IMG/VR virus record: IMGVR_UViG_3300038441_001119
Location: 62,001 to 126,000 of that record
DNA length: 64,000 nt
Direction: 5' to 3' (one strand)
Positions 19,642 to 35,207 of the stretch are shown in pieces. How positions within the stretch are numbered: position 1 is the first letter of the stretch; the number at the start of each line of letters is the position of its first letter. The translations under genes and the position numbers were made by a program. The notes beneath the pieces were generated by a model that saw only the letters and a program-made list of their open reading frames with translations, made no database searches and was not told the origin of the DNA.

Positions 19642-21561
19642 TTATCTATGTTTCCTGTTCCTTACTTCGTCCAAGTCCAGCTTACCCGCAAGGATGTCTT
19701 CCATCTCTTGTCGCTTTAATCCAAGCAAATGCCGGATTGATTCTGCAAACGCAGGATTAGGGATGCGGAAGGGGAGGGTGATCTTGCCCCATCCGTTATT
19801 ACCCACAATCGCAGGGTCGAATAACCCTCCAGTGACAGGTGCCATGTTGTTCAGATTGAGAAGTTCCCCTTTCTGAATCTCGATGGCGTTCTTGTCATCC
19901 ACGTCTTTGTCAGTGGTAGGAGCAAGGCGCAGAATACCTTTACCAACATTACGAGGAGTAATACCGGCACCTACCATTGTGTTCATAGTCTTGTCCCATG
20001 AGAAAGGGACGCCCGGTTTAGCAGGAGTCAATCCCATACGCAGTGCTCTCCAGTACTCATCGTTTTGTTGACCGCGAAGAGTAATACCTTCCCTCAGGTT
20101 ATTGTAGGCACCAGAGGAGAGCATAACGTTGGACTCCAGTCCGGAAAGTCGTTTGGAACCACCGCCTTCTCCCGAACCTTTCGCAGGTTGACGGAACAAG
20201 TCGTAGCCACCCTGACCGCGAGAAGAAGCCTTACTCGACGAGGTATGGTGAAGTTTGAGCATGTAGGCGTTACCTACAAGCACAGGGTTCTCAAGAAATT
20301 GATTGGTCTCTGGATCGAAGATTTCCTCTTCGTCAGGGATTCCCGCTTCTTCCAGTTTTTGAAGAACGGTTTCGTACCACTTCTCGCCGGGTTTGGTGAA
20401 TCCGGGAAGTTTGATGGGCTTACCTTGAGCGGCAGCCACCTTACCCAACATGATCTCGTACAACAGGGAGTTGTTGGTACGCGATGGAATGGAAAGAGGA
20501 TTAAGAAGAACATCCAAAGGCTGACCATCCTTGGTGCGTGGCATCTTCTCATCAGGGATCACAAGGGATACGGTACCCTTCTGACCAGTACGGTAGACAA
20601 CCTTGTCACCCTCTTTGGTAGGGGCGTAGGCTTTGGTAACCACTTTGACACCTTTGGGTGTGTGGAAAACATCAACAACTTCAGCAGGATACTCTTCTTC
20701 CCAGACGGACGAAGAATCACCACGTGCCTGAGACATCGTTTTCGTGAGCTTGCCGACGTTTACACCGGCAGACGAAATAACACGAGGTCTGGTGGAAAGA
20801 ATGATAGGATCGCCGGGGTCTAGGATCTGACCTTTCTGAACAACTCCACGTTCATCCAGTTTAGCGAGTTGTTTCTTGTGGAACTTCTCAGGGAACAGGG
20901 AGCGGAAATGACCAAGGCCACCCTTGATGTCCCGGTCATACTCCTGTTCGTGTGTCTCCATGTGTTCGCTGACCATATTGTCTGCGAAACCTTTACGAAG
21001 GACGATAGCGTCGTCCATGGAGTAACCTTTATATGGAACCACAGCCACACGGGTATTCATTCCCATCGCCGCTGTGCCGTTGTCGTCCGTATAGTTGGAC
21101 GTAGCCAGCAGACCTCCTGCAGTGAACTTGTCTCCTACCTTTACCTTGGAAGTGTTATGGATACCAGACTTACGGTTGAAGCTCTGGTTATTGTAGATTG
21201 CTCGTTTCTTTTTCTCTCCAGTGGCGTTCTTGTAATGAATGTAATCAGGCGTGACTTCAGTCACCTCGCCATCTTCATCCGCAAACACAGCTCCCAGATC
21301 TTTACCGAGCTTTTCATCGAAGGAGAACCCACCATCGTCGGTGGTATCAAGGTTCTGCACCCATGGAGCTTCACGGTTGCGTAACGGCATAGCTTGGTTG
21401 TCGAATCGAGCGCCGTAGAATAGACGCGGACCCTGAACACCAGACTGAATAGGAATATGATTGATGTGAGTACCAAACAGATTCTCGTGAGAGATCAATT
21501 CGTAATCAATTTCATCATCATCAAAGTCCTGAATCTTACCGTTCCTGTAACCTACCGGCAT
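19642..21561 (-). CDS. rpoB: RNA polymerase beta subunit C-terminal part, fused to a beta-prime-like N-terminal segment
   Basis: GARFDNQAMPL, PYKGYSMDDAI, GDKVVYRTGQKG, DVLLNPLSIPSR, YMLKLHH, GGSKRLSGLE; tail GGLFDPAIVG..WGKITLP resembles RpoC DGLFCxxIFG..MGHIELA. Confidence 0.9.
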   Translation of the reverse strand: MPVGYRNGKIQDFDDDEIDYELISHENLFGTHINHIPIQSGVQGPRLFYGARFDNQAMPLRNREAPWVQNLDTTDDGGFSFDEKLGKDLGAVFADEDGEVTEVTPDYIHYKNATGEKKKRAIYNNQSFNRKSGIHNTSKVKVGDKFTAGGLLATSNYTDDNGTAAMGMNTRVAVVPYKGYSMDDAIVLRKGFADNMVSEHMETHEQEYDRDIKGGLGHFRSLFPEKFHKKQLAKLDERGVVQKGQILDPGDPIILSTRPRVISSAGVNVGKLTKTMSQARGDSSSVWEEEYPAEVVDVFHTPKGVKVVTKAYAPTKEGDKVVYRTGQKGTVSLVIPDEKMPRTKDGQPLDVLLNPLSIPSRTNNSLLYEIMLGKVAAAQGKPIKLPGFTKPGEKWYETVLQKLEEAGIPDEEEIFDPETNQFLENPVLVGNAYMLKLHHTSSSKASSRGQGGYDLFRQPAKGSGEGGGSKRLSGLESNVMLSSGAYNNLREGITLRGQQNDEYWRALRMGLTPAKPGVPFSWDKTMNTMVGAGITPRNVGKGILRLAPTTDKDVDDKNAIEIQKGELLNLNNMAPVTGGLFDPAIVGNNGWGKITLPFRIPNPAFAESIRHLLGLKRQEMEDILAGKLDLDEVRNRKHR

Positions 21562-21567
21562 AACTAA

Positions 21568-23427
21568 TTAATATGGAATGTAGTTATTGCTACCCGGTTG
21601 TCCCGGAGATTGCAAGAAACTATTAAGCAAGCCAGTTGCTCTGTTGATCCAAGGCACTTGGGGCGGCTCGTGTTCCATGAACTGAGCTTCAGCGGAAGGT
21701 GTGGCAGGCATCAAGTGTCTGCGAACCTGCGTGGCGTAATTGTGCATCGTGGAACCATAAGGGGTACTACGAAGATTTATGGGAGTTTGAATGCCCTTCT
21801 GACCTTGGGCGCCTACGCGGTTACCGATTCTAGCCGTTTGGATGTTCAGCTGACGAGGACCCATACCGTTGATGGCGTCTTGCTGAGGCTGCATGGAAGC
21901 AGACTTCACAGCATCAAGTGTCTTGCGAATACGATCCATCGAACTGCCAAGATTGATGGAGCCAAGGATGGGATCTTTCTTACCATCACCTGCACCGGAT
22001 TTCCCAGCCAGCTTCTGCGCTTCTTGATTGATCTTGAGGTTGATGTTCTCTTCCTGCAGTTTATCCAGCTTAGACTGCAAACTATCGGTGTCTACTTGCC
22101 CTGCGGCACCGCCGGCAGTTGCAAGAGGCGAGTTTGCCATGGAGGCAGGGGTACCCGGAGGGAGCGTAGCAGGATCAACTGCGTTGTTAGCAGGAGCACC
22201 AGCACGCATATTAGGATCATAAGCAGGCATAGTCGTAGCTGCTTTCTTCACATTGAGCTTGTCGATCTCGCCAGACAGCATGTTCATCTTTGTTTGTTCG
22301 CGTTTATGCACAGCCTTGCGTTTTTCTTCGGCTTCCAGTTGAGCTTGCTTCTGGGCTTCCATTTGCTCCTCTTGTTGGAGCTTGGCTGCCTCTTGCTGCT
22401 CTGACCATTGTTGCTTACGTTCGCCGGATTCGGTACGAAGTTGGCGACGAACGTCCTTACCGACATTACGTTGGATAGCGCCGGAGATAGGGATCTGTTC
22501 CTTCAGAGGGATACGCAGCTTGGTCTCGATGTCTCCGGGCTTACGTGTAGGAAGCGTCACAGACATGTCTCCAAGGTCTTCAGTCTTCTTACTGGACCTC
22601 CACTGGGCAATAGCAGTACCGAGGGCACCAAGGGCACCTACGCCTGCAGCAACACCCAATCCAGCTTTCATACCGGGGGACATACCTTCTTTCGGAGAAG
22701 AGACCGCTTTATTGATGTTGGGAATGTCCAACTGACTCAGCTTTTCATTACCCTTGAGTAGAAGATCCTTAGCAGGTATAGCAAGACCAGCAGCGACACC
22801 CTCAGCAGGACCAATACCTTTCCACACGCTACCAGCAGCAGCGCCGAAACCAGCATTGGTTGCCATCAGGTGACGACGATGAGGGTCAGCCATCGCGTTG
22901 GAAAAGTTTTCAATAGGTCCCTTGCCTTCTCCATAGGTAGCATAGTCAAGAGCGGGACCGCCAGCAAGGGCACCTCCTGCCAAGTGGGTAAGCCAGCTCA
23001 TGACCTTCCCCTTATCTGCAGCTTTCTTTACGACATACGGGATATGCAAGGCGTCTGCGAGGTGCTCAGACTCTTTGTTACCTTCAACAATGAGAGCCTT
23101 AACCTTATCCACAGAAGCACTCTTGATATGCAGCATCTTGCTGACAGCTTCCTTAGCCTTACCGCAACCACGATGCTCAGGGAGAAGTCCAATGGTGTAG
23201 TAACCTACTTTCACCATACCTTCCTTGCGTTCTTGCCATCCCACAAACCCCGCAGGAGACTTGTCGGAGGCCGAACGAATCATGTAGATGTCATCATGGG
23301 AATCAATGTTCAGACCATATGGCCACTTCCATGGAGCCTCGTCGTAGATAGTCTTGAGAACACCTTCGAGGATAGTACGGGAACTGGTGTCTGAAGCAGA
23401 CTTGGAAAACGATTCAACCAGATACAT
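21568..23427 (-). CDS. GNAT acetyltransferase domain fused to a virion-type low-complexity protein
   Basis: IGLLPEHRGCGKAKEAV (motif A), ALIVEGNKESEHLA (motif B); Gly/Ala-rich and coiled-coil remainder with KxA[SA] motifs. Confidence 0.65.
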   Translation of the reverse strand: MYLVESFSKSASDTSSRTILEGVLKTIYDEAPWKWPYGLNIDSHDDIYMIRSASDKSPAGFVGWQERKEGMVKVGYYTIGLLPEHRGCGKAKEAVSKMLHIKSASVDKVKALIVEGNKESEHLADALHIPYVVKKAADKGKVMSWLTHLAGGALAGGPALDYATYGEGKGPIENFSNAMADPHRRHLMATNAGFGAAAGSVWKGIGPAEGVAAGLAIPAKDLLLKGNEKLSQLDIPNINKAVSSPKEGMSPGMKAGLGVAAGVGALGALGTAIAQWRSSKKTEDLGDMSVTLPTRKPGDIETKLRIPLKEQIPISGAIQRNVGKDVRRQLRTESGERKQQWSEQQEAAKLQQEEQMEAQKQAQLEAEEKRKAVHKREQTKMNMLSGEIDKLNVKKAATTMPAYDPNMRAGAPANNAVDPATLPPGTPASMANSPLATAGGAAGQVDTDSLQSKLDKLQEENINLKINQEAQKLAGKSGAGDGKKDPILGSINLGSSMDRIRKTLDAVKSASMQPQQDAINGMGPRQLNIQTARIGNRVGAQGQKGIQTPINLRSTPYGSTMHNYATQVRRHLMPATPSAEAQFMEHEPPQVPWINRATGLLNSFLQSPGQPGSNNYIPY

Positions 23428-25200: not shown

Positions 25201-25397
25201 TGTGATAGGCGTGTCAGTGTGTTTTGGTGTCTTTGTTTGTGAAGTTCAGCAGCTCTAGCAATGATAGCCTCATCACTAAGGATCTGCAGCTCAAGCCAAC
25301 GAGCGAAGCCAGCGTCAACGATTTCCCGTGGACGCCCTTTGACTATTCGGACCTCTGCCTTTGCATTGGTCAGAGGAGTGTTAAGCTCCGAATTCAT
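25161..25397 (-). CDS. hypothetical protein
   Basis: 78-aa ORF. Confidence 0.5.
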   Translation of the reverse strand: MNSELNTPLTNAKAEVRIVKGRPREIVDAGFARWLELQILSDEAIIARAAELHKQRHQNTLTRLSQWLKRHNPLQRFH

Positions 25398-25977
25398 GTA
25401 CTATTTTCCTTTCCACCATGTCGAGCACATGCCCCCAGTCGAATTCATGAGTCGACAGAGCGTAGCTGTGCACGTCCTTACCGTCTAGATCTCGAAGACC
25501 TGTGGGACGCGTTTCGTCACGGAAGTAGGTCATAGCTTCTTCCAGACTGTCGGTCGCTCCACGGAAATCTTCCAGACCGCCGCCCGGGTAGTAGCTAGGT
25601 CCTGCGAATACCCAGAACCTTCCCATAGGAATTGCATTGAGAGGAGGGTTGGTCAGTACGGGGGTAGACAGTGCGTTGGGAGGAACAATTAGCTTTTCCT
25701 TTAATTCCTGCACCATCTTGTGAACAGAGGCCAAGGTGATGGGAGGCTTAAGGGAGACATACACCTGCTCACTGTCCTTGAGAATATGTCCTCCATCTAG
25801 AGGTGCTCCACCAGATGCAGCAGAAACGATCAACTCACTGGTTTCCGGTAACCCAAAGTCTTCCCGGAATTCACGGTTGGATTTCAGACGATCCACACTC
25901 CAACCCGGATCAATCCAGTAATCGTGGTTGATGCCGTTTACTGCGACTTTGATCTTGTTACGTTTGACGACGCTCAT
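25381..25977 (-). CDS. protein with N-terminal ubiquitin-like domain homologous to the di-Ubl
   Basis: KIKVAVNGINHDYWIDPG..REFREDFGLP aligns with KVIVHVNGNRSDFYVPYG..RQFKEDFALP. Confidence 0.7.
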   Translation of the reverse strand: MSVVKRNKIKVAVNGINHDYWIDPGWSVDRLKSNREFREDFGLPETSELIVSAASGGAPLDGGHILKDSEQVYVSLKPPITLASVHKMVQELKEKLIVPPNALSTPVLTNPPLNAIPMGRFWVFAGPSYYPGGGLEDFRGATDSLEEAMTYFRDETRPTGLRDLDGKDVHSYALSTHEFDWGHVLDMVERKIVHEFGA

Positions 25978-26152
25978 AGCCGTTGTTTTTTCCAGATTCC
26001 ACAATGTTGGCAACGAAGGTGTACTTCGAAACCACATGGCATGGTATGGGATGTTTCGTTGTAGATGTTGATGCTACTCTTTGTTTCCCACTGATGTTTG
26101 CACCCTTTGAAGGTGCCTATAAGTAGCCTGTATAGTAGACCTAACATAAGAG

Positions 26153-26236: not shown

Positions 26237-27499
26237 TTAGAACGCTTGGTACATCCGTTTACCGGAACGCTTCGAAGGGGTGAGCCTCAGGGTGGAGCCG
26301 TCGACATGCGTAATAAGAACCGAGGAGTCCGTATTGCGGATGATGCTGGCGATCTCACGGTTATACCAAGTGAGGGAACGGCTGTAGCTGCCTACGCGTG
26401 CATTGGGGTTATCCTCGTCCGTGTCATCAGTTTCAGCACGAAGGTACTGAACGTTGATGTAGTCGTCTTCATCAGGACCGAATTGCTGGAACGGAGAGGC
26501 AAACGACGCTTTGTAGAAAGCTGGAACTTCTTTGATATACTTCAGAAGTTTCTCGTCGACACTATCAAGGGCAGAAGCAATACCGTAACGCTTGGAGTTG
26601 CGGACGATATTGCGGATGGAGTAAGCGTAAGCAGCCGCGTGCTTGTCCTTCTCCTCCAGCTCGACGAAGTTATCGACCAGAGCAAGAACCGAAGTGCGCA
26701 GCTCGGCATCGAATTCAACACTCTCGTCGCTCTCGACATTGAGGAACGAAAGGAACTCCGAAGGAGGTTCATTGAACATCTTGGCTTCATTGATGATCGC
26801 CATCAGGGAGTCCAGCGACAAACCGAAGATAGTCTCGGCCGCCTTGATAACCGCATCCCGAAGATCACCCTCTGGGATCTGGTCACAGATGACAGCACGG
26901 AAAACGTCCTGACTGAGGGCGTCGTAACGCTTGTGGTAACGAACACGCCCCGGACGACTGTTGATGAAGGTGTTGACGTTCGGGTCGTTCGAGGTGAGGA
27001 CGAACAAGTGGGCAGTCGAAGAAGTACCGTCAAGAAGCGTGAGAAGATGAGCGGAATCCTCCTCGCTGTAGATCTTCTCGAACTCGTCCATGATGACGAC
27101 GCATTTGACAGGGATCTTCTGTAGGAAGTCCGAGAACTCTGAACCTTTGAAGAACGAGTTGATAAGCAGGACGGGCGACTTGGACTTGAGTCCGATCATC
27201 TTGGCGGCGACAGACTTGCCCGCACCCGATTTGCCACTGAGGAGAACGCCGATACCACGTTCAAGTTTGTGCCAAGCGGCGAGAGCGCGGTCAACGAACT
27301 TGTCGTCTTCACCGTAGATCTTTTTCGGAAGTTCGAGATCTTCTTTGATTTTCAGGTAGAAACCACTCATGTCGGCTGCGACTTCATACACGCCGACTGG
27401 GAGACCCTTGACGGGAGTGGATGCGCCATTGGTAAAACGAACTTCATTACCATTGGTGACGGAGTAAATGGGCGCTACAGTTGTTGTTTTTTCGGACAT
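26237..27499 (-). CDS. AAA+ ATPase
   Basis: Walker A GKSGAGKS, Walker B VVIMDEFEK, LLTLLDG, TSN, SRPGR arginine finger; start MSEKT. Confidence 0.9.
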   Translation of the reverse strand: MSEKTTTVAPIYSVTNGNEVRFTNGASTPVKGLPVGVYEVAADMSGFYLKIKEDLELPKKIYGEDDKFVDRALAAWHKLERGIGVLLSGKSGAGKSVAAKMIGLKSKSPVLLINSFFKGSEFSDFLQKIPVKCVVIMDEFEKIYSEEDSAHLLTLLDGTSSTAHLFVLTSNDPNVNTFINSRPGRVRYHKRYDALSQDVFRAVICDQIPEGDLRDAVIKAAETIFGLSLDSLMAIINEAKMFNEPPSEFLSFLNVESDESVEFDAELRTSVLALVDNFVELEEKDKHAAAYAYSIRNIVRNSKRYGIASALDSVDEKLLKYIKEVPAFYKASFASPFQQFGPDEDDYINVQYLRAETDDTDEDNPNARVGSYSRSLTWYNREIASIIRNTDSSVLITHVDGSTLRLTPSKRSGKRMYQAF

Positions 27500-27887
27500 A
27501 TTGGGTGCTGAGAGGAAATAAAAAAATAGAAAGGTGAAATGGAGGAGTGCCGCCATGCCGACACCCCTCCATCTCGTACGGTCTTGCAACCAACAGCAAG
27601 GAAACCCGTATCGCGTAAGCAGAACCGTTGCTCACTGGTTACGAGTTTCGAAGACAACCACATTGGAGGTTGACGCTAGGGTGACTTCTACCTTGCACTT
27701 ACCATTAGGCAGATGCTTATACCTTATACCTGAAATTAGTAACCACGGCAGGGCGTGTTAACTCCTGCTATCCTCTCCTGACAACCGATGGCCCGGTTTA
27801 AGAGGATCACCTGTTTGAGGCAGGTGGTTCGACACTTACGAACTTCGAGGTTTAACCAACAGACGACCCACCAAGGTCGACTGAAGA

Positions 27888-28676
27888 TTAGCCCGGACGA
27901 TTGGCTTGGGCGTGGCGGCGGCTGTTTGCAGCAGCACGCATGGCCTCGACGGTTTCTCGGCACATTTCTTTGTGCTCTTCCGAGTGTCGGGTCCAGTAGC
28001 CACCACCGCTGCCTGCGTGGATGATCTGCTTGGCGTAGGCTTCCCGTTCTTCAACGGAATTGCCGTGACCAGCAGCGATATGATCCACCCAAAGGACACC
28101 GGCATGCTGCAGCTTCTGCATGACCTGAATGTGCCCATCGGAACCGTTGCCAAAACTTGCGACCGCGTATGGTGTGATCGGTTTTGGTTGTTGGTCCCAG
28201 CGTCCGAATGATGCCGTCAACGAAGAGGAGGAAGCACGCTCGAACTTGCGTTCAAAGTAGGAAACGGCGAGAGCCAGATCCGTACCGCGTTTCTCCATTT
28301 CCTCAGGGGTAAGCAGCTGATAACAGACCCGCATGATCGTGGCGTTCTCAGGCCACTCACTCACGGGCAGGTCCTTTTCACGACCTTTGTACTTGCGCAT
28401 ATCTCCGCTACCCATCACTTTGATAATATGCATCTCGCGTTCGATAGGCATACTAATAAATTTCGGGTGCAGAATTCCATCTTTGACCCCACCGAAGAGT
28501 TCGATGGCACCGACGAGGCCACGGCGGACAGGGTAGAACCCGGTCAGGCGTACATTGACTTTGGATTGCTCAACCATTGGCGGGTTGAGTTCTCCGAAAA
28601 GTCCTTGATGGATGGCTTTGACGGATGCCTCGGTTTCGTGAGGTGCTGCAGGGGTTTCGTTCTTATGGTCGGACAT
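27888..28676 (-). CDS. hypothetical protein
   Basis: 262 aa, downstream of promoter motif copy 5. Confidence 0.7.
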   Translation of the reverse strand: MSDHKNETPAAPHETEASVKAIHQGLFGELNPPMVEQSKVNVRLTGFYPVRRGLVGAIELFGGVKDGILHPKFISMPIEREMHIIKVMGSGDMRKYKGREKDLPVSEWPENATIMRVCYQLLTPEEMEKRGTDLALAVSYFERKFERASSSSLTASFGRWDQQPKPITPYAVASFGNGSDGHIQVMQKLQHAGVLWVDHIAAGHGNSVEEREAYAKQIIHAGSGGGYWTRHSEEHKEMCRETVEAMRAAANSRRHAQANRPG

Positions 28677-29021: not shown

Positions 29022-30686
29022 TCACAGGCTTTGAAGGTACTGCCCGATGGCAGCTGCATTCTTGCCCATGATCGGACTGTTCTTCGTGTCGTACATTACC
29101 GTTTGCTGGATGAAGCGGAGAGCTTCTTCAGCGCCTTTGCGGAGATGCTTGTTCTCAGAATCGGAATGCAGCGTAAGCATGCGGTCGATCATGAGACGAG
29201 ATTGATCTGAAGGCTTATTCAGCTGCGGCAGACTGTTGAGGGTCATTGCAATGTCCTTGTGGGTAGCGACACCCACTTCTGGAAGAACATTGATCATGTG
29301 CTGCAAACCAGAGATGGCTTCGTAACGCGACAGGGAAAAGCGCGACGACACTTCGAGGAAGAGGTGTGGAATCTTCCAGTCGGCGGAATTGATAGCTTCG
29401 TTGTTGTCAACGTCGGTATCAATAGTCGTCGCCGAATCTGTTCCAATAGGCTTCCCATTGCGAGTAATCATCGATTCCGAGATCCCCGTCACGATAGTCT
29501 TTGGGCGAGCGGGCACGCCACCCGCGCCTCCGGAAGGATAGGATGAACCATGACCACTGTAAGTCGTTCCTCCACTATAGCGACCACCTTGGCCTCCTCC
29601 GTAGTAGTTGCCACCACCATGATGGCTGGAATAGTTTGACTTTACTTCGGTGATACAGTCTTTCCACTCTTCGGGGAAGCCCTCGTCCTTGATGTGGGTT
29701 ACCCAGTGCAACGACAGCTTCTCGCGGACTTCCGCAGGAAGGGAGGCATCCCAACCGGGAACTGCGATGATGTGACCGAAGTCCTTCACCGGTACCAGCT
29801 CGGAGTTCGCAGGCAGAACGCGGTTACCTTGGTTGTCATACTCCGCAGACATCTTCACCCGGATACGGGCATGGATGTCGATAGGATACACAGCCATCTT
29901 GCCGACGGTGATATGGAAGCCCTGCTTGGTCGTCTCGTCGTCCTTGTCGGTCGCAGAGTCGAAAGCGCCCATATGAACGTGGTTGTGGGTTGTACCGTGC
30001 CAGTCACCGGAGTTGACGCCAAACTGCTCACGCAGCTTTGCGAACACTTCAAGGTTCTCCTCGGTCTCGTAATCCACCTTGACCGTCATTGCTCCACGTG
30101 TGATGCGCTGATGGAATGGGAAGTGGATGTATGCACCAGCCTCAGTGAGAAGGTGCGAGATGTGGGTCTCGGCGTTGTAGGTCTTGACCGACCAGATGTG
30201 GTACGCCACGATCTGTTTCCAGTCGTCGTACGTGATCTTCGGAGCGAGGATCTTCAGCTCCGGAGCTGCTGATTCCATGTTGAAACCAGCCGGTGGCGTT
30301 TCAGTCCACCCACGGAAGAACCTGTTTTCACGCGGAGCATAGAGCTTGCTGCCGCTGATCCGCAGACCACCTGCAGGCATTGCGACCTGTACGTACCGTG
30401 GATCCTCTTCTTCTGGGGCTGGTTCGGACGTAACAGTGATTACCGGTTGCTTGGCAACTGCAGCCGTTGAGGCTCCTGCTGTCGGCGGTACCATCGGGTT
30501 GACGCGCACTGGTTCTTCCGGGTTACTGAGGTCTGCGTTGGCAATGGCTTCGTCAACAGTTCGATTGGTGTTGTTACCCTTACCTCCTCCGCGAGGACCA
30601 CCTTGGTTCCGTTTGGACTTGTCGATGGTCTGGCCTTGCCCGCCCTTTCGGTTGGACCCTCCTTTGTTGTGATTGGTTTTGGCCAT
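29022..30686 (-). CDS. JAB/MPN+ metalloprotease-domain protein (Prok-JAB, PRTRC protein A-like)
   Basis: upstream AETH, GTTHNHVHMGAFDSATDKDDE (HxH-x7-S-x2-D), GFHITVG; start MAKTN. Confidence 0.8.
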   Translation of the reverse strand: MAKTNHNKGGSNRKGGQGQTIDKSKRNQGGPRGGGKGNNTNRTVDEAIANADLSNPEEPVRVNPMVPPTAGASTAAVAKQPVITVTSEPAPEEEDPRYVQVAMPAGGLRISGSKLYAPRENRFFRGWTETPPAGFNMESAAPELKILAPKITYDDWKQIVAYHIWSVKTYNAETHISHLLTEAGAYIHFPFHQRITRGAMTVKVDYETEENLEVFAKLREQFGVNSGDWHGTTHNHVHMGAFDSATDKDDETTKQGFHITVGKMAVYPIDIHARIRVKMSAEYDNQGNRVLPANSELVPVKDFGHIIAVPGWDASLPAEVREKLSLHWVTHIKDEGFPEEWKDCITEVKSNYSSHHGGGNYYGGGQGGRYSGGTTYSGHGSSYPSGGAGGVPARPKTIVTGISESMITRNGKPIGTDSATTIDTDVDNNEAINSADWKIPHLFLEVSSRFSLSRYEAISGLQHMINVLPEVGVATHKDIAMTLNSLPQLNKPSDQSRLMIDRMLTLHSDSENKHLRKGAEEALRFIQQTVMYDTKNSPIMGKNAAAIGQYLQSL

Positions 30687-30690
30687 GGTA

Positions 30691-32121
30691 TTAGATGAAC
30701 TGCGGAGTAAGCTGATCGGGTTTGAAGGTATTGATTGCCAGAATTTTGCTATGAGCTTTCTCAAAGGCTACGATAGGTTGAGGATCTTTCGGATGTGCGG
30801 CAGCTGCAAATTCCGCGAAATGCTTCGCAGCAGTTGCATCACGCAGGTGTATCCCTGCATGAGAGTTGTCACCAGTAGCACTGATGGTCGAGGTGAATGA
30901 CGTGGGACTCACGTTCTTGGAAGTGTGCGTAGGGAAGTACATCACACCATAGAAGAACGGGCCGTCGATCCACTGATTGAAGAACTCCTGTGCGTAACCC
31001 CAGAGGGCTTCGGCGTTCAGGATGTCTCCGGGCATCTTGTTGATCGCAGTACTGTTTTGAGCCGTGAGGATCGAAAGCTGATACGAACTGTCATACGGAG
31101 CACGTTGAACGCTGCGAATCCTGATGGCACCACGAGTAGTACCCTCTTGGGAGAGAGGGCCGCCCAGCATCTTCTCGATACCGACGCGTGTGGCTTCTTG
31201 GAAAGTCGCAGCACCACCTGCAGAGGGTACAACGAGGTACGATACCGACAGCGAGACCATCTTGGGCTTGAACGCAGGTGCGTCCCAGATGGACCGCGCC
31301 ATGTTCTTGTTGATAGTCATCTGTGAAACACCGCCTCCAACATCCCCAAACAGAGTGGAGAGACGCTGAGAACCAGCGATGGAGTGAGTGATACCAGCGA
31401 GAGGTGAGTTCTCGAAGATGAAGATCGGACGCAGCAGGGCGACGATAAACTTCCGTGAATCCGCCGGACCATAGTAGACACCGTTGGTAACAGGGATGGT
31501 TGCCTGAATGCAGTCAGCGATAGCCATCTTGGTCTCGCTGTTGCGGAGGGCCAGAATATGAGAGATATCCTGCAGAATGTGGGCTGGAGCACCCAGACGA
31601 GCGCGACCTTGGTCACCCCCACCTGTACTGGCAGAATTCTTCAGCATTCGCAGCATGTTCTTGTTAGCGTCCTCCTTTCTACGCAAGAACGAGAATTTTG
31701 GAGATTCGTAAACTTCCATGAGATCTTTGTGGGTGATCTCATCGAACTTCGTATTCATGAATGCGGCAGCAGCTGGTTCCCAGCTTTGCTGAATCATGCG
31801 GGCGACAACCTTGGAACGGAAGTCAGCGCCGTAGGCAGTAGGCTCTGGGACAAACGCAGGGATGTCTGCAAGGGGAATACCTTGGATGGCGTCGGTAGTC
31901 GAGGTAGTCCACGTGCCGCTGCTGAAGGTCAGGAGACGAACAGGCGACCCACTAGAACCGACGATTGTCGAGGTTACCGGGGGAGTCGGGATCGAGAACT
32001 GCCAAGCTGGAGCTGGAGTGGCTGGAGGTGGCGGAGTTTCGACTGCTGCAGCGGCTGGGGCCTTGTCCTTTTTGGCTGCAGTTTTGGTTACCCTCTTGGT
32101 GGCTTTCTTGGTAGTACTCAC
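30691..32121 (-). CDS. hypothetical protein inside the Ubl operon
   Basis: 476 aa, overlaps the E1 stop; no recognised domain. Confidence 0.75.
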   Translation of the reverse strand: MSTTKKATKRVTKTAAKKDKAPAAAAVETPPPPATPAPAWQFSIPTPPVTSTIVGSSGSPVRLLTFSSGTWTTSTTDAIQGIPLADIPAFVPEPTAYGADFRSKVVARMIQQSWEPAAAAFMNTKFDEITHKDLMEVYESPKFSFLRRKEDANKNMLRMLKNSASTGGGDQGRARLGAPAHILQDISHILALRNSETKMAIADCIQATIPVTNGVYYGPADSRKFIVALLRPIFIFENSPLAGITHSIAGSQRLSTLFGDVGGGVSQMTINKNMARSIWDAPAFKPKMVSLSVSYLVVPSAGGAATFQEATRVGIEKMLGGPLSQEGTTRGAIRIRSVQRAPYDSSYQLSILTAQNSTAINKMPGDILNAEALWGYAQEFFNQWIDGPFFYGVMYFPTHTSKNVSPTSFTSTISATGDNSHAGIHLRDATAAKHFAEFAAAAHPKDPQPIVAFEKAHSKILAINTFKPDQLTPQFI

Positions 32122-32837
32122 GTCAGTTTCACTTCAGTTGCTTCTTCATGCACTTCCGCTTTCGGGGCTTCCATTGGAATATCCTTGAAGCGGACACTGG
32201 TGACACCGTTGCGGGTGCCCTTGATTTCTGCTGGCACATTCTCCAGACTTGCGCAACGCTGCAGAGCATTGAACAGCCAGAGCATGAAGCTACCAGCGTT
32301 GTGGTTGGCAATCGGCAGTTGAGGTGCTGACTCGATTGCTTCGACGGTATTGCAGCTTTCGCCGGGGCCACGACCATCAGGGACGATGTTGTGGCGCACG
32401 TATGGGTCGCGATAGGTATCACCCCATTCCGGTATGAATAGGTATGCCTCGGGGTCTTCTTCTTCATTGGCACCCCAGATGATCGGGATGTCCATGCGTT
32501 CCGCGATCTTTTTCGCGTAGCAGCGTGCGTCGTGGTTGTCGACAGCCACGAACAGAATCTTGACATCGTCAGGAAGCTCGGTCATGTCGGAGATATAGGT
32601 CTCCATGCATGTGATCTTCTTGTCGGTGAACTTATCGTACATCGAGGCGTAGACTTTCGCCTTGTTTTCCGAGTCACCAAAGTGTGCGCCGATTTGACGA
32701 AGAGTATTCTTCTTCTCAAACTTGTCGCCATCGATGAGGAGCAGGTTGTGCGTCATCATGAGGGCGGGCAGGATGTGGGAGGTGACTCCTCCACAACCGA
32801 TAATGGCGATTGTATCAAAGGATCGTTCGATCTTCAT
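32118..32837 (-). CDS. E1/ThiF-family adenylating enzyme
   Basis: IIGCGGVTS, IDGDKFEKKNTLRQ, NKAKV, AVDNHDAR, ESC..PQLPIAN putative catalytic Cys. Confidence 0.88.
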   Translation of the reverse strand: MKIERSFDTIAIIGCGGVTSHILPALMMTHNLLLIDGDKFEKKNTLRQIGAHFGDSENKAKVYASMYDKFTDKKITCMETYISDMTELPDDVKILFVAVDNHDARCYAKKIAERMDIPIIWGANEEEDPEAYLFIPEWGDTYRDPYVRHNIVPDGRGPGESCNTVEAIESAPQLPIANHNAGSFMLWLFNALQRCASLENVPAEIKGTRNGVTSVRFKDIPMEAPKAEVHEEATEVKLT

Positions 32838-32846
32838 GAGTGGGTG

Positions 32847-33062
32847 TTACAGAGACTTGGACTGGTAGGTGGGGTTGTGTTTAGCAAAGATATCCCCGAG
32901 GATGCGGAGAGTTTTGCTAGGGATTTTGGGTGCTGGTTTCGGAGTCGTGAACTCCGTGATTCCTGCGGACAGGATATCAGCTGCGGCTTTGTCAGTGGGG
33001 GCTGCGCGGGCTTTAGCTGCTAGTGCGAGGAAGAAATCCCCGTCTTTTTTCTTAGCTGCCAT
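32847..33062 (-). CDS. small hypothetical protein inside the Ubl operon
   Basis: 71-aa ORF between E2-like and E1 genes. Confidence 0.55.
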   Translation of the reverse strand: MAAKKKDGDFFLALAAKARAAPTDKAAADILSAGITEFTTPKPAPKIPSKTLRILGDIFAKHNPTYQSKSL

Positions 33063-33065
33063 TTA

Positions 33066-34016
33066 TCAATCCCAGATAGGAGGGAGGGTTGCGGTGACCG
33101 TGCGAGCAATGGTTTTGGGGAACACAATGTGTAGATAGGGAGCAAGATCCCCTTCGTCAGCAATGCGTACTTCAGCGGTCATACCTGTCATCGTCTTGGA
33201 GACATCGAGGTTACCGGGAGATTCTTCGAGGTCGATGAAGACGTCGTTGAGACCGCGTGGTCCGAAAGCACCACGGGAAACCTGCGGGGACATACAGATG
33301 CGCCCGTCGTCGAAGATGTTATAAAGCGGAGGCTGATACAGGCGCTTGGTGGACTGCTCGACCATGTAGATGTACTGGGAGACATATCCCGGTTCACTGC
33401 GAGAACCAGCCTGCTCGGGATGGCTCTGACGTTGAACGAACATCACTTTGTCAAAGCCACACTCCTTGGCATTGATCGCGCACTTCCAGTTCATGGAGTT
33501 CTGGTTGAGATAGTGTCTGGAGTACTCCAGACCACCGCGATCCATATTGCTGGTGTATGGCTTGAACTTGATGGTTTTCGAAGCACCATCCCAGTAAGGA
33601 ACAAATGCACCGTTCCAAGTGCAGTAGTCCATGATCCAGATCTGCCAGATTTCACCGGCACGTTTCCACATCGACCATTTGATGTCTTGTGCGACACCAT
33701 CCACCTGAACCATCCGTTCAGTGGCCCTCATGATAGGTTCGAATGTGTCGCCACCAGTGATGTGCGAAGCGGCGATCTGTTCCACTTCCTCAATGGTGAT
33801 TTTGGCAAGGGTGAACTCACCGGGTTTGACCGATGGCATGAAGGCCATCATTGACGTTGCTGGTTTGTCCACTCCGATCACGAAACTACTCGCAGCAGGA
33901 CGCTGGATAGCTTCATAAACGATTGCATCGCCAGCAGGCGGTGCAGGTGGCGGACCTCCAGCGATATCAGCTGCGACTGCGGCAGCTTCTTCTTGTGGGG
34001 CAGCGGTTGCGCTCAT
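33066..34016 (-). CDS. prokaryotic E2-like protein (E2 family D / PRTRC protein B-like)
   Basis: LYQPPLYNIFDDGRICM matches the PxxNxxxxGxIC E2 active-site pattern. Confidence 0.7.
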   Translation of the reverse strand: MSATAAPQEEAAAVAADIAGGPPPAPPAGDAIVYEAIQRPAASSFVIGVDKPATSMMAFMPSVKPGEFTLAKITIEEVEQIAASHITGGDTFEPIMRATERMVQVDGVAQDIKWSMWKRAGEIWQIWIMDYCTWNGAFVPYWDGASKTIKFKPYTSNMDRGGLEYSRHYLNQNSMNWKCAINAKECGFDKVMFVQRQSHPEQAGSRSEPGYVSQYIYMVEQSTKRLYQPPLYNIFDDGRICMSPQVSRGAFGPRGLNDVFIDLEESPGNLDVSKTMTGMTAEVRIADEGDLAPYLHIVFPKTIARTVTATLPPIWD

Positions 34017-34032
34017 TTAGGGTGTTGTAGAT

Positions 34033-34078
34033 AAAAACAAAGAAAGAGGGGTGACACACGTTTCCGCATGTCACCCCC
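34033..34078 (-). terminator. intrinsic terminator between Ubl and E2 genes
   Basis: GGGGTGACA/TGTCACCCC stem + U-rich tract. Confidence 0.6.
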
Positions 34079-34123
34079 GCAGTTTGTTGCCACCTCCGAT
34101 ATGGACTATCAAAGGTAGCCCGT

Positions 34124-34154
34124 GAGTGAGGTTCAGTCTTCCCGAACCTCACTC
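34124..34154. other. stable hairpin right after the Ubl stop codon
   Basis: GAGTGAGGTTC/GAACCTCACTC 11-bp stem. Confidence 0.65.
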
Positions 34155-34161
34155 TGGATAA

Positions 34162-34611
34162 TTATGCCAATGCCTTGGACGAGGCGACGGTTTGGACAGT
34201 GATGACATCACCGGCCGAAAGCGTCACGTTGGATTCAGAGCCGTTGACGAACACGCGGATGTTCGAAGGAAGAGCGAAGTCCTCCTTGAACTGACGGTCG
34301 TTTTGAAGCGTAGAGGTGGTGGTGCCGTACGGGACGTAGAAGTCGCTGCGGTTGCCATTGACATGGACAATCACTTTGACACGTGCAGCTGCCTTGGACG
34401 AGGCAACGGTTTGCACTTCGACGATGTCCGAAGCGGCGAGTCGCTTGTCCGCAGTAGAACCGTTAACGATAATACGGATGTTCGAAGGAAGAGCGAAGTC
34501 CTCCTTGAACTGCCGATCACTGGCGAGAGCCGAGGCGTAGGTACCGGTTGGAACCCACCAGGTGTTGGTATTGCCGTTGATTTTGACTGCGATTTTGATG
34601 CGAGCTGCCAT
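34162..34611 (-). CDS. tandem di-ubiquitin-like (beta-grasp) protein
   Basis: Met + two 73-aa repeats (AAR..VQTVASSKA) + LA; hydrophobic strands, VNG motif and L..GD.(I/V) pattern typical of ThiS/MoaD/Ubl. Confidence 0.8.
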   Translation of the reverse strand: MAARIKIAVKINGNTNTWWVPTGTYASALASDRQFKEDFALPSNIRIIVNGSTADKRLAASDIVEVQTVASSKAAARVKVIVHVNGNRSDFYVPYGTTTSTLQNDRQFKEDFALPSNIRVFVNGSESNVTLSAGDVITVQTVASSKALA

Positions 34612-34760: not shown

Positions 34761-35207
34761 TTAGGCAGCAACCTTTGGAGTAAGGTCGATGAACTGAGCG
34801 GCGGCGCCAATTCCATGGCTGGTGATGATTTCGCGAACACGTCGCTTGCCGCTAATGGAGAGACCGCGAACGGGGTTCCAGTAGTAGCCAGTGTCGTGTA
34901 GCTGCGTCAGATCCCGGAGGAATCCAACGGGAAGGTCTGCGACGGCGTGGTGCAGGTAGTGGCGGTATCGAGGCGACAGCAACGATTCAGCACCAAGACC
35001 TGAGCCATTCACACCGTCGGCCAACATCTGCTCAACGTCGGCGAATCGTCCAAGAGCGCAACACTCACCCTTCAGGTTGAAGAGTTTGTTAGGCACCCGA
35101 CGCTTGGTATCCGCACCGTAATGCGAGATGGTGTCGTCGAGGGCATGCGCCATACGATGGGATTGAGGAATTTCGGAGCTGTAGCAAGGGGCGAGATTTA
35201 GAGCCAT
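34761..35207 (-). CDS. hypothetical protein
   Basis: 148 aa; CCALGR and LTQLHD motifs. Confidence 0.7.
   Translation of the reverse strand: MALNLAPCYSSEIPQSHRMAHALDDTISHYGADTKRRVPNKLFNLKGECCALGRFADVEQMLADGVNGSGLGAESLLSPRYRHYLHHAVADLPVGFLRDLTQLHDTGYYWNPVRGLSISGKRRVREIITSHGIGAAAQFIDLTPKVAA

What the first reader, a model, noticed from the sequence alone, without database searches (positions are those of the whole stretch)
29022..34611. Phage-encoded ubiquitin-like conjugation operon: di-Ubl, E2, E1, unknown gene, JAB
Seen: five large co-oriented genes plus a small one, in the order di-Ubl (34162-34611), E2-like (PLYNIFDDGRICM), 71-aa ORF, E1/ThiF (GCGG, DxDxxExxNxxRQ, SC..Q), a 476-aa unknown, and a JAB protease (HNH..S..D). 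Established: E1+E2+Ubl+JAB is the minimal set for prokaryotic Ubl conjugation and deconjugation. Related modules occur in PRTRC/Prok-E2 loci and in bacterial antiviral systems (CBASS Cap2/Cap3, Bil). Inference: no sulfur-transfer genes (thiG, moaE) are nearby, so this is probably protein conjugation run by the virus itself, aimed at host or phage proteins or at countering host Ubl defences.
Basis: partly seen in the sequence, partly recalled or inferred. Interest (0 to 1): 0.9.

Follow-up and report, generated by a model that had tools for sequence, protein, structure and literature searches.

The report
Jumbo-phage ubiquitin-like conjugation gene cassette
A 212-kb uncultured phage and about a dozen of its relatives carry a conserved gene set that looks like a complete ubiquitin-style protein-tagging system, including a tag gene built from tandem repeats like eukaryotic polyubiquitin; I found no report of such a set in phages, and nothing about it has been tested at the bench.

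Summary
All six co-oriented genes and the quoted motifs are at 29022-34611 on the minus strand of a 212-kb viral contig.

- **E1 (solid):** Pfam ThiF, E 3.6e-14, above the gathering score.
- **Tag (well supported):** It is made of ~73-aa units. A family member passes the Pfam ThiS threshold. Across nine phages there are 1-3 head-to-tail units, each ending in Lys-Ala. The last unit is followed by 0-3 extra residues, as in polyubiquitin. Two units in one phage differ by 24 nucleotide changes, all synonymous.
- **JAB protease (supported):** It has an invariant E...HxHx7SxxD motif. The 17 best Foldseek PDB hits are all MPN/JAB-fold proteins. A profile comparison links it to a Prok-JAB protein of Salmonella phage Arash.
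- **E2 (weakest part):** It has an invariant PxxN[IV]x3Gx[IV]C motif, sub-threshold Prok-E2_D and PRTRC_B hits, and an hhalign probability of 67%. Foldseek found no UBC-fold match.

Gene order is kept in relatives whose E2 is only 26-34% identical. No relative was found in bacterial genomes, and no sulfur-transfer genes lie nearby.

Most likely this is a phage-run conjugation pathway that attaches the tag through a C-terminal alanine. The targets are unknown. It is a new variant of a known kind. It is not a member of Bil, Bub, CBASS or PRTRC.

The parts
34761..35207 (-). 148-aa gene of unknown function, always directly upstream of the tag gene
   Evidence: It has orthologues at the same position in L004, L011, L012, L013 and L014 (phmmer E 5e-30 to 6e-8). 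It has no Pfam or PHROG hit. Whether it belongs to the module is uncertain.
34162..34611 (-). Poly-Ubl precursor gene. Unit 1 is 34390-34611 and unit 2 is 34171-34389. Each unit ends ...SSKA. Codons for a Leu-Ala cap and the stop follow at 34162-34170.
   Evidence: The two units are 62% identical. Weak hits point to MoaD (8.9e-5), ThiS and SAMP1. Family member L020 passes the Pfam ThiS gathering score (28.5 against 22.5 bits). Nine phages carry 1-3 units, all ending KA, followed by a cap of LA, A, V, L, W, RAA, A or nothing. Units 2 and 3 of L011 differ by 24 nucleotide changes, all synonymous.
34017..34161 (-). Structured spacer between the tag gene and the E2 gene. It holds three hairpins. 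The last one (34047-34078) is G+C-rich and followed by a U-rich tract, like an intrinsic terminator or attenuator.
   Evidence: The fold energy is -72.5 kcal/mol, z = -9.1 against shuffles, and the terminator scan found the hairpin. A G+C-rich hairpin plus U-tract lies at the same place in all five other loci folded, without sequence conservation.
33066..34016 (-). E2-like protein of 316 aa, the candidate Ubl-carrier. The active-site motif P230-x2-N233-I-x3-G-x-I-C241 is encoded at 33294-33329. The N-terminal part (residues ~55-153) is beta-rich and matches nothing.
   Evidence: P230, N233, C241 and N269 are invariant in 13 family members. Pfam Prok-E2_D scores E 0.0023 and is hit by 3 of 10 members. 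PRTRC_B scores 0.018. hhalign against PRTRC_B proteins gives 58-67% probability, E 5e-5. The AF2 model has pLDDT 71.7. Foldseek found no UBC match in PDB or BFVD.
32847..33062 (-). Small 71-aa ORF between E2 and E1
   Evidence: An ORF of 44-90 aa sits at this position in five relatives, but its sequence is not conserved. It has no family hit. It may or may not be a gene.
32118..32837 (-). E1-type adenylating enzyme: a single ThiF/MoeB-like domain of 239 aa
   Evidence: Pfam ThiF scores E 3.6e-14, 52.9 bits against a 28.1 cut-off. The family profile matches MccB (3.4e-7), SUMO E1 subunit UBA2 (5e-6), TcdA and BubCD in the PDB. G14-C-G-G, D36-G-D38, E41, N44, R47, Q48, K59 and D100 are conserved. 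Cys162 is kept in all 8 core orthologues.
30691..32121 (-). Gene X, 476 aa, unknown function, fast-evolving, with a Lys-rich N-terminal tail. Its GTG start overlaps the E1 stop codon.
   Evidence: It is present between E1 and JAB in all core relatives, but at only 12-26% identity. It has no Pfam or PDB match. It shows no similarity to the ~410-460-aa proteins of PRTRC loci.
29022..30686 (-). JAB/JAMM-type metalloprotease of 554 aa. It has a disordered N-terminal tail, an MPN-like core (residues ~145-350), a Gly/Ser-rich linker and a helical C-terminal domain. The motif H234-x-H236-x7-S244-x2-D247 is encoded at 29946-29987, and the upstream Glu is E173.
   Evidence: E173, H234, H236, S244 and D247 are invariant in 9 orthologues. 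In the AF2 model the core has pLDDT ~70-95. The 17 best Foldseek PDB hits are all MPN/JAB folds (Rpn8/Rpn11, Npl4, prokaryotic JAB 2kcq and 2kks), with best E 6e-3 and probability 0.95. hhalign against Arash gp247c, which passes Pfam Prok-JAB at 1.4e-7, gives 75% probability and E 2.6e-5 over 104 columns including the motif. The family has no direct Pfam hit.
27888..28676 (-). 262-aa gene of unknown function after JAB. Membership of the cassette is doubtful.
   Evidence: A gene of 217-331 aa follows JAB in the relatives. Sequence similarity is detectable only to L004 and L007, at E ~5e-4. It has no family hit.

Best explanation
This is a virus-encoded ubiquitin-like protein conjugation pathway, inherited as a core module of a rare lineage of large phages. 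The steps below mark what is shown and what is inferred.

1. **Tag synthesis.** The tag is made as a precursor of one to three head-to-tail ThiS/MoaD-like beta-grasp units of about 73 aa. Each unit ends in Lys-Ala, and the last unit usually carries 1-3 extra 'cap' residues. The sequence shows this directly. A terminator-like hairpin after the tag gene suggests it is transcribed in excess over the enzyme genes (inferred).
2. **Processing.** The JAB/JAMM metalloprotease cuts after each Lys-Ala. This releases monomers with a free C-terminal alanine, and the same enzyme probably also removes the tag from targets. This is inferred by analogy with BilC and Cap3.
3. **Activation.** The small ThiF-type E1 adenylates that alanine. 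It may then hold the tag on its conserved Cys162 (inferred).
4. **Transfer.** The tag passes to the invariant Cys241 of the E2-like protein. That protein's large, fast-evolving non-catalytic parts probably choose the target without an E3, as proposed for Bil (inferred).
5. **Targets.** They are unknown. Candidates are host proteins, phage proteins, or the co-conserved Lys-rich protein X.
For: - **E1:** It scores above the Pfam ThiF threshold with a full set of adenylation-site residues.
- **Ubl family link:** L020 passes the Pfam ThiS threshold. The window protein gives weak MoaD, ThiS and SAMP1 hits.
- **Precursor architecture:** There are 1, 2 or 3 units in different phages. Every unit ends KA. 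Caps are LA, A, V, L, W, RAA or A, and one phage has no cap, its gene ending exactly at ...SSKA.
- **Selection on the units:** Units 2 and 3 of L011 differ by 24 nucleotide changes, all synonymous. A crude neutral expectation puts this at about 7e-15.
- **JAB:** The JAMM motif is invariant, MPN folds fill the top of the fold search, and hhalign links the family to a bona fide Prok-JAB protein.
- **E2-like:** PxxN[IV]x3Gx[IV]C is invariant in 13 sequences. Two independent libraries hit only E2 families on this segment. hhalign to PRTRC_B gives 67%.
- **Synteny:** The gene order is kept in relatives whose RNA polymerase beta is 61-73% identical and whose E2 is only 26-34% identical.
- **Context:** No sulfur-transfer families appear among the neighbours.
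- **Precedents:** A C-terminal Ala is conjugated by Cap2, and Cap3 cuts tandem cGAS-cGAS (PMC10097602). The JAB protease BilC pre-processes its Ubl (10.1101/2023.09.26.559546).
Against: - The E2 assignment is weak. All HMM hits are below curated thresholds and cover only about 20-33 residues.
- Foldseek with the AF2 model found no UBC or E2 structure in the PDB, and only two uncharacterised phage proteins in BFVD.
- JAB has no direct Pfam hit, and no fold hit reaches E 1e-3.
- The tag lacks the canonical C-terminal Gly or Gly-Gly.
- No E3, no target and no biochemical evidence exist.
- My HMM and hhalign searches found no Ubl gene in the more distant cousins, L021/L027 and phage Arash.
Confidence: 0.65

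Rival explanations
1. The biochemistry is the same (Ubl conjugation), but the purpose is conflict between viruses or with host defence. In one form the phage carries a Bil-like defence module to tag and disable competing phages. In another it uses the JAB protease and decoy tags to strip or saturate host Bil, CBASS or Bub conjugation.
For: Characterised bacterial E1-E2-Ubl-JAB systems work in antiviral immunity (PMC11601596; PMC10097602). The closest plasmid E1 relatives sit in Bub/6E operons. The E2-like protein and X evolve much faster than E1, as expected for arms-race components.
Against: The cassette sits at a fixed place in the core region, between the GP88-like gene and the RNA polymerase genes, in all relatives despite deep divergence. 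It does not look like a patchy accessory island. No relative was found in 185,579 bacterial and archaeal genomes. PADLOC models hit only the E1, and only weakly.
Confidence: 0.15
2. This is a sulfur-carrier or cofactor pathway, not protein tagging. In this reading the ThiS/MoaD-like protein is trimmed by the JAB protease, as with CysO/Mec+ or QbsE/QbsD. The E1 then adenylates it and it is converted to a thiocarboxylate to build a small molecule or a modified base. The 'E2' would be something else.
For: The tag's only family links are to the sulfur carriers ThiS, MoaD and SAMP1. The E1 is a minimal MoeB/ThiF-size enzyme with a conserved Cys. The E2 fold is not confirmed. That JAB proteases trim sulfur carriers is from my own knowledge and was not tested here.
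Against: No rhodanese, cysteine desulfurase, ThiG/ThiH, MoaE or similar family is in the window neighbours scanned or in the related loci. Units end in Lys-Ala, not Gly-Gly. A tandem-repeat precursor with 1-3 units is not known for sulfur carriers, to my knowledge. A protein with an invariant E2-type Cys motif is always present.
Confidence: 0.1
3. The E1 modifies the C-terminus of the small protein without transferring it to proteins, for example by MccB-like adenylation or cyclisation that makes a peptide-nucleotide or lactam product. The E2-like protein and X would be scaffolds or export or immunity factors.
For: The best solved-structure match of the E1 by sequence is MccB. The C-terminus is non-canonical.
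Against: MccB-type substrates are short peptides ending in Asn (my own knowledge). Here the substrate is a 73-aa repeated folded domain ending in Ala. The invariant JAMM protease and the E2-type Cys motif have no role in such pathways.
Confidence: 0.05

Closest known systems
Bil (BilABCD, bacterial ISG15-like) antiviral conjugation systems
   Same: It has the same four parts as separate genes: Ubl, E2, JAB peptidase and E1. In Bil the JAB pre-processes the Ubl, no E3 is encoded, and the Ubl may have two beta-grasp domains (10.1101/2023.09.26.559546; PMC11601596).
   Different: The Bil E1 is a large IAD-AAD-CYS protein, whereas this one is a single 239-aa domain. The Bil Ubl ends in Gly, whereas this one ends in Lys-Ala. 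Every unit here keeps the mature C-terminus and unit number varies, so it looks like a cleavable polymer rather than a fixed two-domain tag. The cassette is encoded by a lytic phage lineage, and no bacterial relatives were found. An extra conserved protein X is present. No sequence-level match was seen beyond the superfamily.
PRTRC cassettes (ParB-related, ThiF-related) of plasmids and genomic islands
   Same: They combine a small Ubl (PRTRC_C), an E2 (PRTRC_B), a ThiF-family E1 and a JAB. The active-site segment of PRTRC_B, PxxNVx6C, aligns with the phage E2-like motif with the same spacing.
   Different: There is no ParB and no PRTRC_E. NCBIfam scores fall far below the cut-offs (PRTRC_B 14 against 131 bits, PRTRC_ThiF 17 against 145 bits). 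X is unrelated to the large PRTRC proteins.
Bub / 6E (DUF6527) operons
   Same: The closest plasmid-borne E1 relatives by tblastn lie in 'multiubiquitin - E2/UBC - ThiF - DUF6527' operons. Their Ubls have 1-3 beta-grasp domains (PMC11601596). BubCD appears among the E1 profile's PDB hits.
   Different: Bub E1 and E2 lack catalytic cysteines and work through oxyesters, and Bub operons carry the DUF6527 serine protease. Here both Cys residues are conserved and there is no DUF6527. hhalign of the E2-like family against a Bub E2 and a DUF6527 protein was negative.
Type II CBASS Cap2/Cap3
   Same: A C-terminal Gly or Ala is activated and conjugated through E1 and E2 cysteines. [quoted passage not shown] PADLOC E1-E2 models weakly hit the phage E1.
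   Different: Cap2 is an E1-E2 fusion and the conjugated protein is the CD-NTase, not a beta-grasp Ubl. The window has no CD-NTase or effector.
Eukaryotic polyubiquitin genes (own knowledge, not tested here)
   Same: The repeats are head-to-tail and each ends in the mature C-terminus. The last repeat carries extra residues that must be removed. Repeats are kept identical at the protein level while diverging at synonymous sites.
   Different: No sequence relationship to ubiquitin was detected. There are 1-3 units only, and the C-terminus is Lys-Ala rather than Gly-Gly.
Salmonella phage Arash gp246c-gp248c (cultured, 181 kb)
   Same: Arash is among the closest cultured relatives by RNA polymerase beta (32% identity). 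It carries adjacent ThiF (7.8e-15), Prok-JAB (1.4e-7) and Prok-E2_D-like (0.024) genes. hhalign links its JAB and E2-like proteins to the window families.
   Different: The gene order is E2-JAB-E1. I recognised no Ubl and no X. The E1 is 346 aa. The proteins are annotated only as structural or hypothetical, from a permissive virion proteome (PMC10585845).

Membership tests
E1 / ThiF-MoeB adenylating enzyme superfamily (PF00899) | The profile HMM match is above the curated threshold | tested here: met
   Pfam ThiF scores 52.9 bits against a 28.1 cut-off, E 3.6e-14. The family profile hits MccB, UBA2, TcdA and BubCD in the PDB.
E1 / ThiF-MoeB adenylating enzyme superfamily (PF00899) | Nucleotide-binding GxGxxG loop, Arg/Gln/Asn ATP-contact motif (DxDxxExxNxxRQ), Lys, and Mg-binding Asp | tested here: met
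   G14-C-G-G17, D36, D38, E41, N44, R47, Q48, K59 and D100 are conserved across the orthologues aligned, including Arash for most of them.
E1 / ThiF-MoeB adenylating enzyme superfamily (PF00899) | A catalytic Cys that forms a thioester with the Ubl (canonical E1s only) | tested here: inconclusive
   Cys162 is conserved in the 8 core orthologues but not in Arash. Its equivalence to the E1 catalytic Cys was not established structurally.
E2 / UBC superfamily (including Prok-E2 families) | The profile HMM match is above the curated threshold | tested here: not met
   Prok-E2_D scores 18.1 bits against a 25 cut-off over 21 residues, with 3 of 10 members matching. PRTRC_B scores 14.4 against 131 bits. 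hhalign gives 58-67% over 33 columns.
E2 / UBC superfamily (including Prok-E2 families) | A catalytic Cys about 8 residues after a conserved Asn of an (H)PN-like flap, following a beta-strand | tested here: met
   P230, N233 and C241 are invariant in 13 sequences, and the N-to-C spacing of 8 is the same as in PRTRC_B.
E2 / UBC superfamily (including Prok-E2 families) | UBC fold (alpha/beta sandwich: four-strand meander, flap, crossover helix) | tested here: inconclusive
   The AF2 model (pLDDT 71.7) has four strands, a loop carrying the Cys, then a helix. Foldseek found no E2 among the listed PDB or BFVD hits. The isolated C-terminal domain was not searched on its own.
JAB / JAMM / MPN+ metalloproteases | Zinc-site motif E...HxHx7SxxD | tested here: met
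   E173, H234, H236, S244 and D247 (554-aa numbering) are invariant in 9 orthologues.
JAB / JAMM / MPN+ metalloproteases | MPN fold | tested here: inconclusive
   The top 17 Foldseek PDB hits are all MPN-fold proteins, with probability up to 0.95, but the best E is 6e-3 and TM-scores are low. The model core has pLDDT 70-95.
JAB / JAMM / MPN+ metalloproteases | Profile HMM match | tested here: not met
   None of the 9 members gives a Pfam JAB-family hit. There is only a transitive link: hhalign at 75% and E 2.6e-5 to Arash gp247c, which passes Prok-JAB.
ThiS/MoaD-type beta-grasp Ubl | Profile HMM match | tested here: inconclusive
   The window protein scores below the cut-offs (MoaD 22.9 against 49.5 bits, ThiS, SAMP1). 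Family member L020 passes Pfam ThiS at 28.5 against 22.5 bits. No structure was predicted.
ThiS/MoaD-type beta-grasp Ubl | C-terminal Gly-Gly (or Gly) for adenylation | tested here: not met
   All units in nine phages end in Lys-Ala. Ala is a documented alternative in CBASS.
Bil (BilABCD) | [quoted passage not shown] | tested here: not met
   The E1 is a single 239-aa ThiF domain. The Bil architecture is taken from PMC11601596.
PRTRC | ParB-family gene plus PRTRC_A/B/C/E/F proteins that pass the NCBIfam models | tested here: not met
   There are only sub-threshold PRTRC_B and PRTRC_ThiF hits and no ParB. X is unrelated to the large PRTRC proteins.
Bub / 6E | A DUF6527 serine protease, and E1 and E2 that lack catalytic Cys | tested here: not met
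   No DUF6527 hit was found among the cassette proteins. Cys162 and Cys241 are conserved. hhalign against a Bub E2 and a DUF6527 protein was negative.
Polyubiquitin-type precursor (architecture, not homology) | Head-to-tail units that each end in the mature C-terminus, a removable C-terminal cap, and units held identical by purifying selection | tested here: met
   Unit numbers are 1, 2 or 3. Caps are 0-3 residues. Units 2 and 3 of L011 differ only at synonymous sites: 24 nucleotide changes and 0 amino-acid changes. Actual cleavage cannot be tested with these tools.

The most novel reading that the evidence does not exclude
A lineage of large lytic phages has carried its own complete ubiquitin-like tagging system as a core, vertically inherited module. 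The parts are a polyubiquitin-style precursor gene, a processing and deconjugating JAB protease, a minimal E1 and an E3-independent E2. The chemistry uses a C-terminal Lys-Ala instead of Gly-Gly. The virus uses the system to modify host or viral proteins during infection. If so, this would be, as far as I could find, the first virus-of-bacteria Ubl conjugation pathway and the first polyubiquitin-like gene architecture outside eukaryotes.
Probability: 0.45. Interest if true: 0.85.

Novelty: new variant of a known kind. Interest (0 to 1): 0.72.

Why it matters
**Why it would matter.** The bacterial E1-E2-Ubl-JAB systems characterised so far in the papers I read (CBASS Cap2/Cap3, Bil, Bub) are host-side and are linked to antiviral defence. 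Here the same toolkit sits in the conserved core of a phage lineage. That would show viruses of bacteria running their own protein tagging, as many eukaryotic viruses manipulate ubiquitin.

**The precursor gene.** Its tandem units, each ending in the mature C-terminus, its cap residues and its synonymous-only divergence parallel polyubiquitin closely. They also give a clear, testable processing site.

**A practical handle.** The Lys-Ala end predicts a simple mass-spectrometry signature: after trypsin, modified lysines should carry a +71.04 Da Ala remnant. This makes target discovery practical.

**What I did not find.** Two broad jumbo-phage reviews that I searched do not mention any such system (PMC7824862; PMC13282480). 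My phrase searches found no paper on a phage-encoded Ubl pathway. The paper library is incomplete, so this is absence of evidence only.

Tried and rejected
**Searches that found nothing**
- Megablast of the cassette against GenBank phages gave no match.
- tblastn of the E2-like protein against plasmids gave no match.
- The word-indexed protein search found only self for the E2-like protein, both as a single sequence and as a profile.
- Single-protein scans of IMG/VR with E2, E1 and JAB returned only the source contig.
- PDB sequence searches for the E2-like protein, the Ubl, JAB and X gave nothing meaningful.
- A scan of bacterial and archaeal genomes with the JAB family motifs found no relative.

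**Comparisons that were negative**
- hhalign of the E2-like family against a Bub E2 and a DUF6527 protein.
- hhalign of the E2-like family against Arash gp250c.
- hhalign of the Ubl family against Arash gp251c.
- hhalign of X against the large PRTRC proteins.
- A first comparison of the JAB family with Arash gp248c used the wrong partner and means nothing.
- Foldseek with the full-length E2-like model gave no E2 hit.

**Ideas considered and set aside**
- A fixed two-domain ISG15-like tag. Rejected because unit number varies and every unit keeps the KA end.
- A prophage or plasmid origin. Rejected because no cellular relatives were found.
- The small 71-aa ORF as a conserved partner. Its position is conserved but its sequence is not.

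**Records not fetched**
- The best plasmid E1 hits were on Clostridium botulinum plasmids, and some PRTRC hits were on Vibrio cholerae plasmids. I used Celeribacter, Arthrobacter, Streptomyces, Photobacterium toruni, Shewanella and Vibrio campbellii records instead.

Full report
**1. What is there**

The window is part of IMGVR_UViG_3300038441_001119, a 212,352-bp viral contig. The same contig appears as Ga0247822_10000002. Almost all genes run on the minus strand.

The neighbours are typical of a large lytic phage:
- an RNA polymerase beta-like subunit,
- a DNA ligase,
- a helicase,
- a GP88-like protein (and the Pfam labels).

Two details need adjusting. The JAB gene most likely starts at the ATG at 30686, giving 554 aa, the length of the database gene call P0002. 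The start of X (GTG, 32119-32121) overlaps the E1 stop codon.

The nearest cultured relatives are remote. Salmonella phage Arash and Vibrio phages D69, D181 and D148 have an RNA polymerase beta that is 32-33% identical.

**2. The cassette is conserved**

Relatives of the JAB protein and of the E2-like protein led to further loci:
- metagenomic contigs L004/L005, L006, L007 and L011-L014;
- L020 (the same contig as L023), L024/L025 and L026, found by motif scans.

All show the same gene order: a 148-aa gene, the Ubl gene, E2-like, a small ORF, ThiF, X, JAB. The cassette lies between a GP88-like gene and the RNA polymerase genes.

Identity to the window differs sharply by gene:

| Gene | Identity to window |
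|---|---|
| RNA polymerase beta | 61-73% |
| E1 | 36-58% |
| JAB | 36-47% |
| E2-like | 26-34% |
| X | 12-26% |

This is a vertically inherited core module with slowly evolving catalytic parts and fast-evolving E2-like and X parts. It does not look like a recently acquired island. A motif scan of 185,579 bacterial and archaeal genomes found no relative.

More distant versions also exist:
- L021 (the same contig as L027), with a weak E2-like match, then E1, a 297-aa ORF and JAB;
- phage Arash, with gp248c Prok-E2_D-like, gp247c Prok-JAB and gp246c ThiF.

**3. The parts**

*E1.* Pfam ThiF scores above threshold. The family profile hits MccB, the SUMO E1 subunit UBA2, TcdA and BubCD in the PDB. 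The ATP-site residues are conserved, and Cys162 is kept in the eight core orthologues. At 239 aa it is a minimal MoeB/ThiF-size enzyme. It has no rhodanese domain and no second adenylation domain.

*Ubl.*
- The 149-aa product is two ~73-aa units that are 62% identical.
- It gives weak hits to MoaD (8.9e-5), ThiS and SAMP1.
- The L020 orthologue passes the Pfam ThiS gathering score.
- Unit number is 1 in L014, 3 in L011 and 2 elsewhere.
- Every unit ends in Lys-Ala.
- After the last unit come LA, A, V, L, W, RAA or A. In L024 nothing follows, and the gene stops exactly after ...SSKA.
- In L011, units 2 and 3 are identical proteins but differ at 24 nucleotides in 23 codons, all synonymous.

This is the architecture and selection pattern of polyubiquitin genes (own knowledge). 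It points to a mature tag with a C-terminal alanine released by proteolysis.

A third, degenerate copy of the unit forms the N-terminus of the 218-aa ORF at 25381-26037. It does not end in KA.

*JAB.*
- No Pfam model matches any of the nine orthologues.
- E173, H234, H236, S244 and D247 are invariant in the exact JAMM spacing.
- The AlphaFold model has a confident core.
- Its 17 best PDB matches are all MPN/JAB folds: Rpn8/Rpn11, Npl4, a BRCA1-A complex subunit, an eIF3 subunit, and the prokaryotic JAB proteins 2kcq and 2kks. The E-values are only 6e-3 and weaker.
- hhalign links the family to Arash gp247c, which passes Pfam Prok-JAB. The match has 75% probability and E 2.6e-5 over 104 columns, including the motif.

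*E2-like.* The family has only about 13 known members.
- P230, N233, C241 and N269 are invariant.
- The motif PxxN[IV]x3Gx[IV]C has the same Pro-Asn and Asn-Cys spacing as PRTRC_B proteins taken from plasmids.
- It also resembles the UBC active-site signature (own knowledge, a lead only).
- For the window protein, the only Pfam hit and the only NCBIfam hit are to E2 families, Prok-E2_D (0.0023) and PRTRC_B (0.018). Both are below threshold and cover about 20 residues.
- hhalign against PRTRC_B gives 58-67% probability.
- The AF2 model (pLDDT 71.7) shows a four-strand meander, a loop carrying the Cys, then a helix. This is compatible with a UBC core.
- Foldseek found no E2 in the PDB. In BFVD it found only two uncharacterised phage proteins.

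I therefore treat 'E2' as probable, not shown.

*X and the small ORF.* X has no detectable relatives outside the clade. The small ORF is conserved only in position.

**4. Expression signal**

A G+C-rich hairpin followed by a U-tract lies directly after the Ubl gene in all six loci folded, with no sequence conservation. The window has three hairpins there, z = -9.1. This fits a tag made in excess over its enzymes. That reading is inference.

**5. Mechanism**

The best-supported reading is a conjugation pathway:
1. JAB cuts the precursor after each Lys-Ala.
2. E1 adenylates the alanine.
3. The tag passes to Cys241 of the E2-like protein.
4. The E2-like protein transfers the tag to targets without an E3.

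Each step has a precedent. The JAB protease BilC pre-processes its Ubl. Cap3 cuts a tandem cGAS-cGAS fusion at the end of the first copy, and CD-NTases ending in alanine are conjugated by Cap2. Only the sequence features are shown here. All the chemistry is inferred.

**6. Rivals**

- **Sulfur carrier.** A CysO/Mec+-like pathway (own knowledge) would explain the ThiS link and the JAB. It would not explain the repeat precursor, the Lys-Ala end, the missing sulfur-transfer genes or the ever-present E2-type Cys motif.
- **Defence or counter-defence role.** This uses the same biochemistry and cannot be excluded. The fixed core position and the lack of cellular relatives argue against a recently borrowed defence island.
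- **MccB-like chemistry.** C-terminal modification without transfer is unlikely for a folded, repeated 73-aa domain.

**7. Comparison with known systems**

The cassette works like Bil: separate Ubl, E2, JAB and E1 genes, no E3, and pre-processing by JAB. It fails the defining features of each named family:
- **Bil:** the E1 architecture differs.
- **Bub:** there is no DUF6527, and the catalytic Cys residues are present.
- **CBASS:** there is no E1-E2 fusion and no CD-NTase.
- **PRTRC:** there is no ParB, and scores fall far below the cut-offs.

The closest plasmid E1s are in Bub-type operons. The closest E2 motif is in PRTRC_B. I therefore file it as a new, phage-borne variant of prokaryotic Ubl conjugation systems.

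**8. Novelty**

Searches of the paper library found no description of a phage-encoded E1-E2-Ubl-JAB pathway. Two broad jumbo-phage reviews do not mention one. In phage Arash the related genes are annotated only as structural or hypothetical. That annotation comes from a virion-preparation proteome that listed 116 proteins, many of them enzymes, so it is weak evidence of expression at most. The library is incomplete, and this is not proof of novelty.

**9. Verdict**

- Confidence that this is a protein-conjugation pathway: about 0.65.
- Interest: 0.72.

Noticed in passing
window 25381-26037 (-), Ubl-like part 25735-25974: A 218-aa ORF begins with a third, diverged copy of the cassette's Ubl unit (30% identity; family HMM E about 1e-27). 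This copy does not end in Lys-Ala. It is fused to a C-terminal domain that matches PHROGs of unknown function (phrog_1411, phrog_4811). No orthologue was seen in the related loci.
   Followed up: partly
window 26237-27589 (-): An AAA+ ATPase (phrog_2376, E 2e-64; Pfam AAA) lies between the cassette and the Ubl-fusion ORF. It is absent from the stretches of related contigs that I held. A link to the Ubl system (an unfoldase?) is pure speculation.
   Followed up: no
L011:7450-8190: A related phage has a tri-Ubl gene with a 28-residue N-terminal extension. Its units 2 and 3 encode identical proteins through 24 synonymous differences.
   Followed up: yes
L018 (Salmonella phage Arash, OQ632216.1, 176281-179301): A cultured phage carries adjacent ThiF, Prok-JAB and Prok-E2_D-like genes (gp246c-gp248c). 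They are annotated only as structural or hypothetical proteins. They could serve as an experimental handle.
   Followed up: partly
window 27536-27575 (-): A very strong 17-bp hairpin lies downstream of the 262-aa gene and just inside the 5' end of the longest ATPase ORF. It is possibly the terminator that closes the cassette's transcription unit.
   Followed up: no
window 30691-32121 and 29022-30686 (-), N-terminal ~40 residues: Protein X and the JAB protein both begin with Lys-rich, low-complexity tails in most orthologues. These tails could be DNA or RNA binding, or acceptor sites for the tag.
   Followed up: partly
window 21568-23427 (-) and 19642-21561 (-): A 619-aa gene is conserved in all relatives, with weak acetyltransferase labels in their precomputed Pfam hits. 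It sits directly upstream of the RNA polymerase beta-like gene. The lineage appears to have multisubunit-type phage RNA polymerase genes.
   Followed up: no
L008 (Celeribacter indicus plasmid pP73C): A Bub/6E-type operon (multiubiquitin, E2/UBC, ThiF, DUF6527) is interrupted by an IS256 transposase between the E2 and E1 genes.
   Followed up: no
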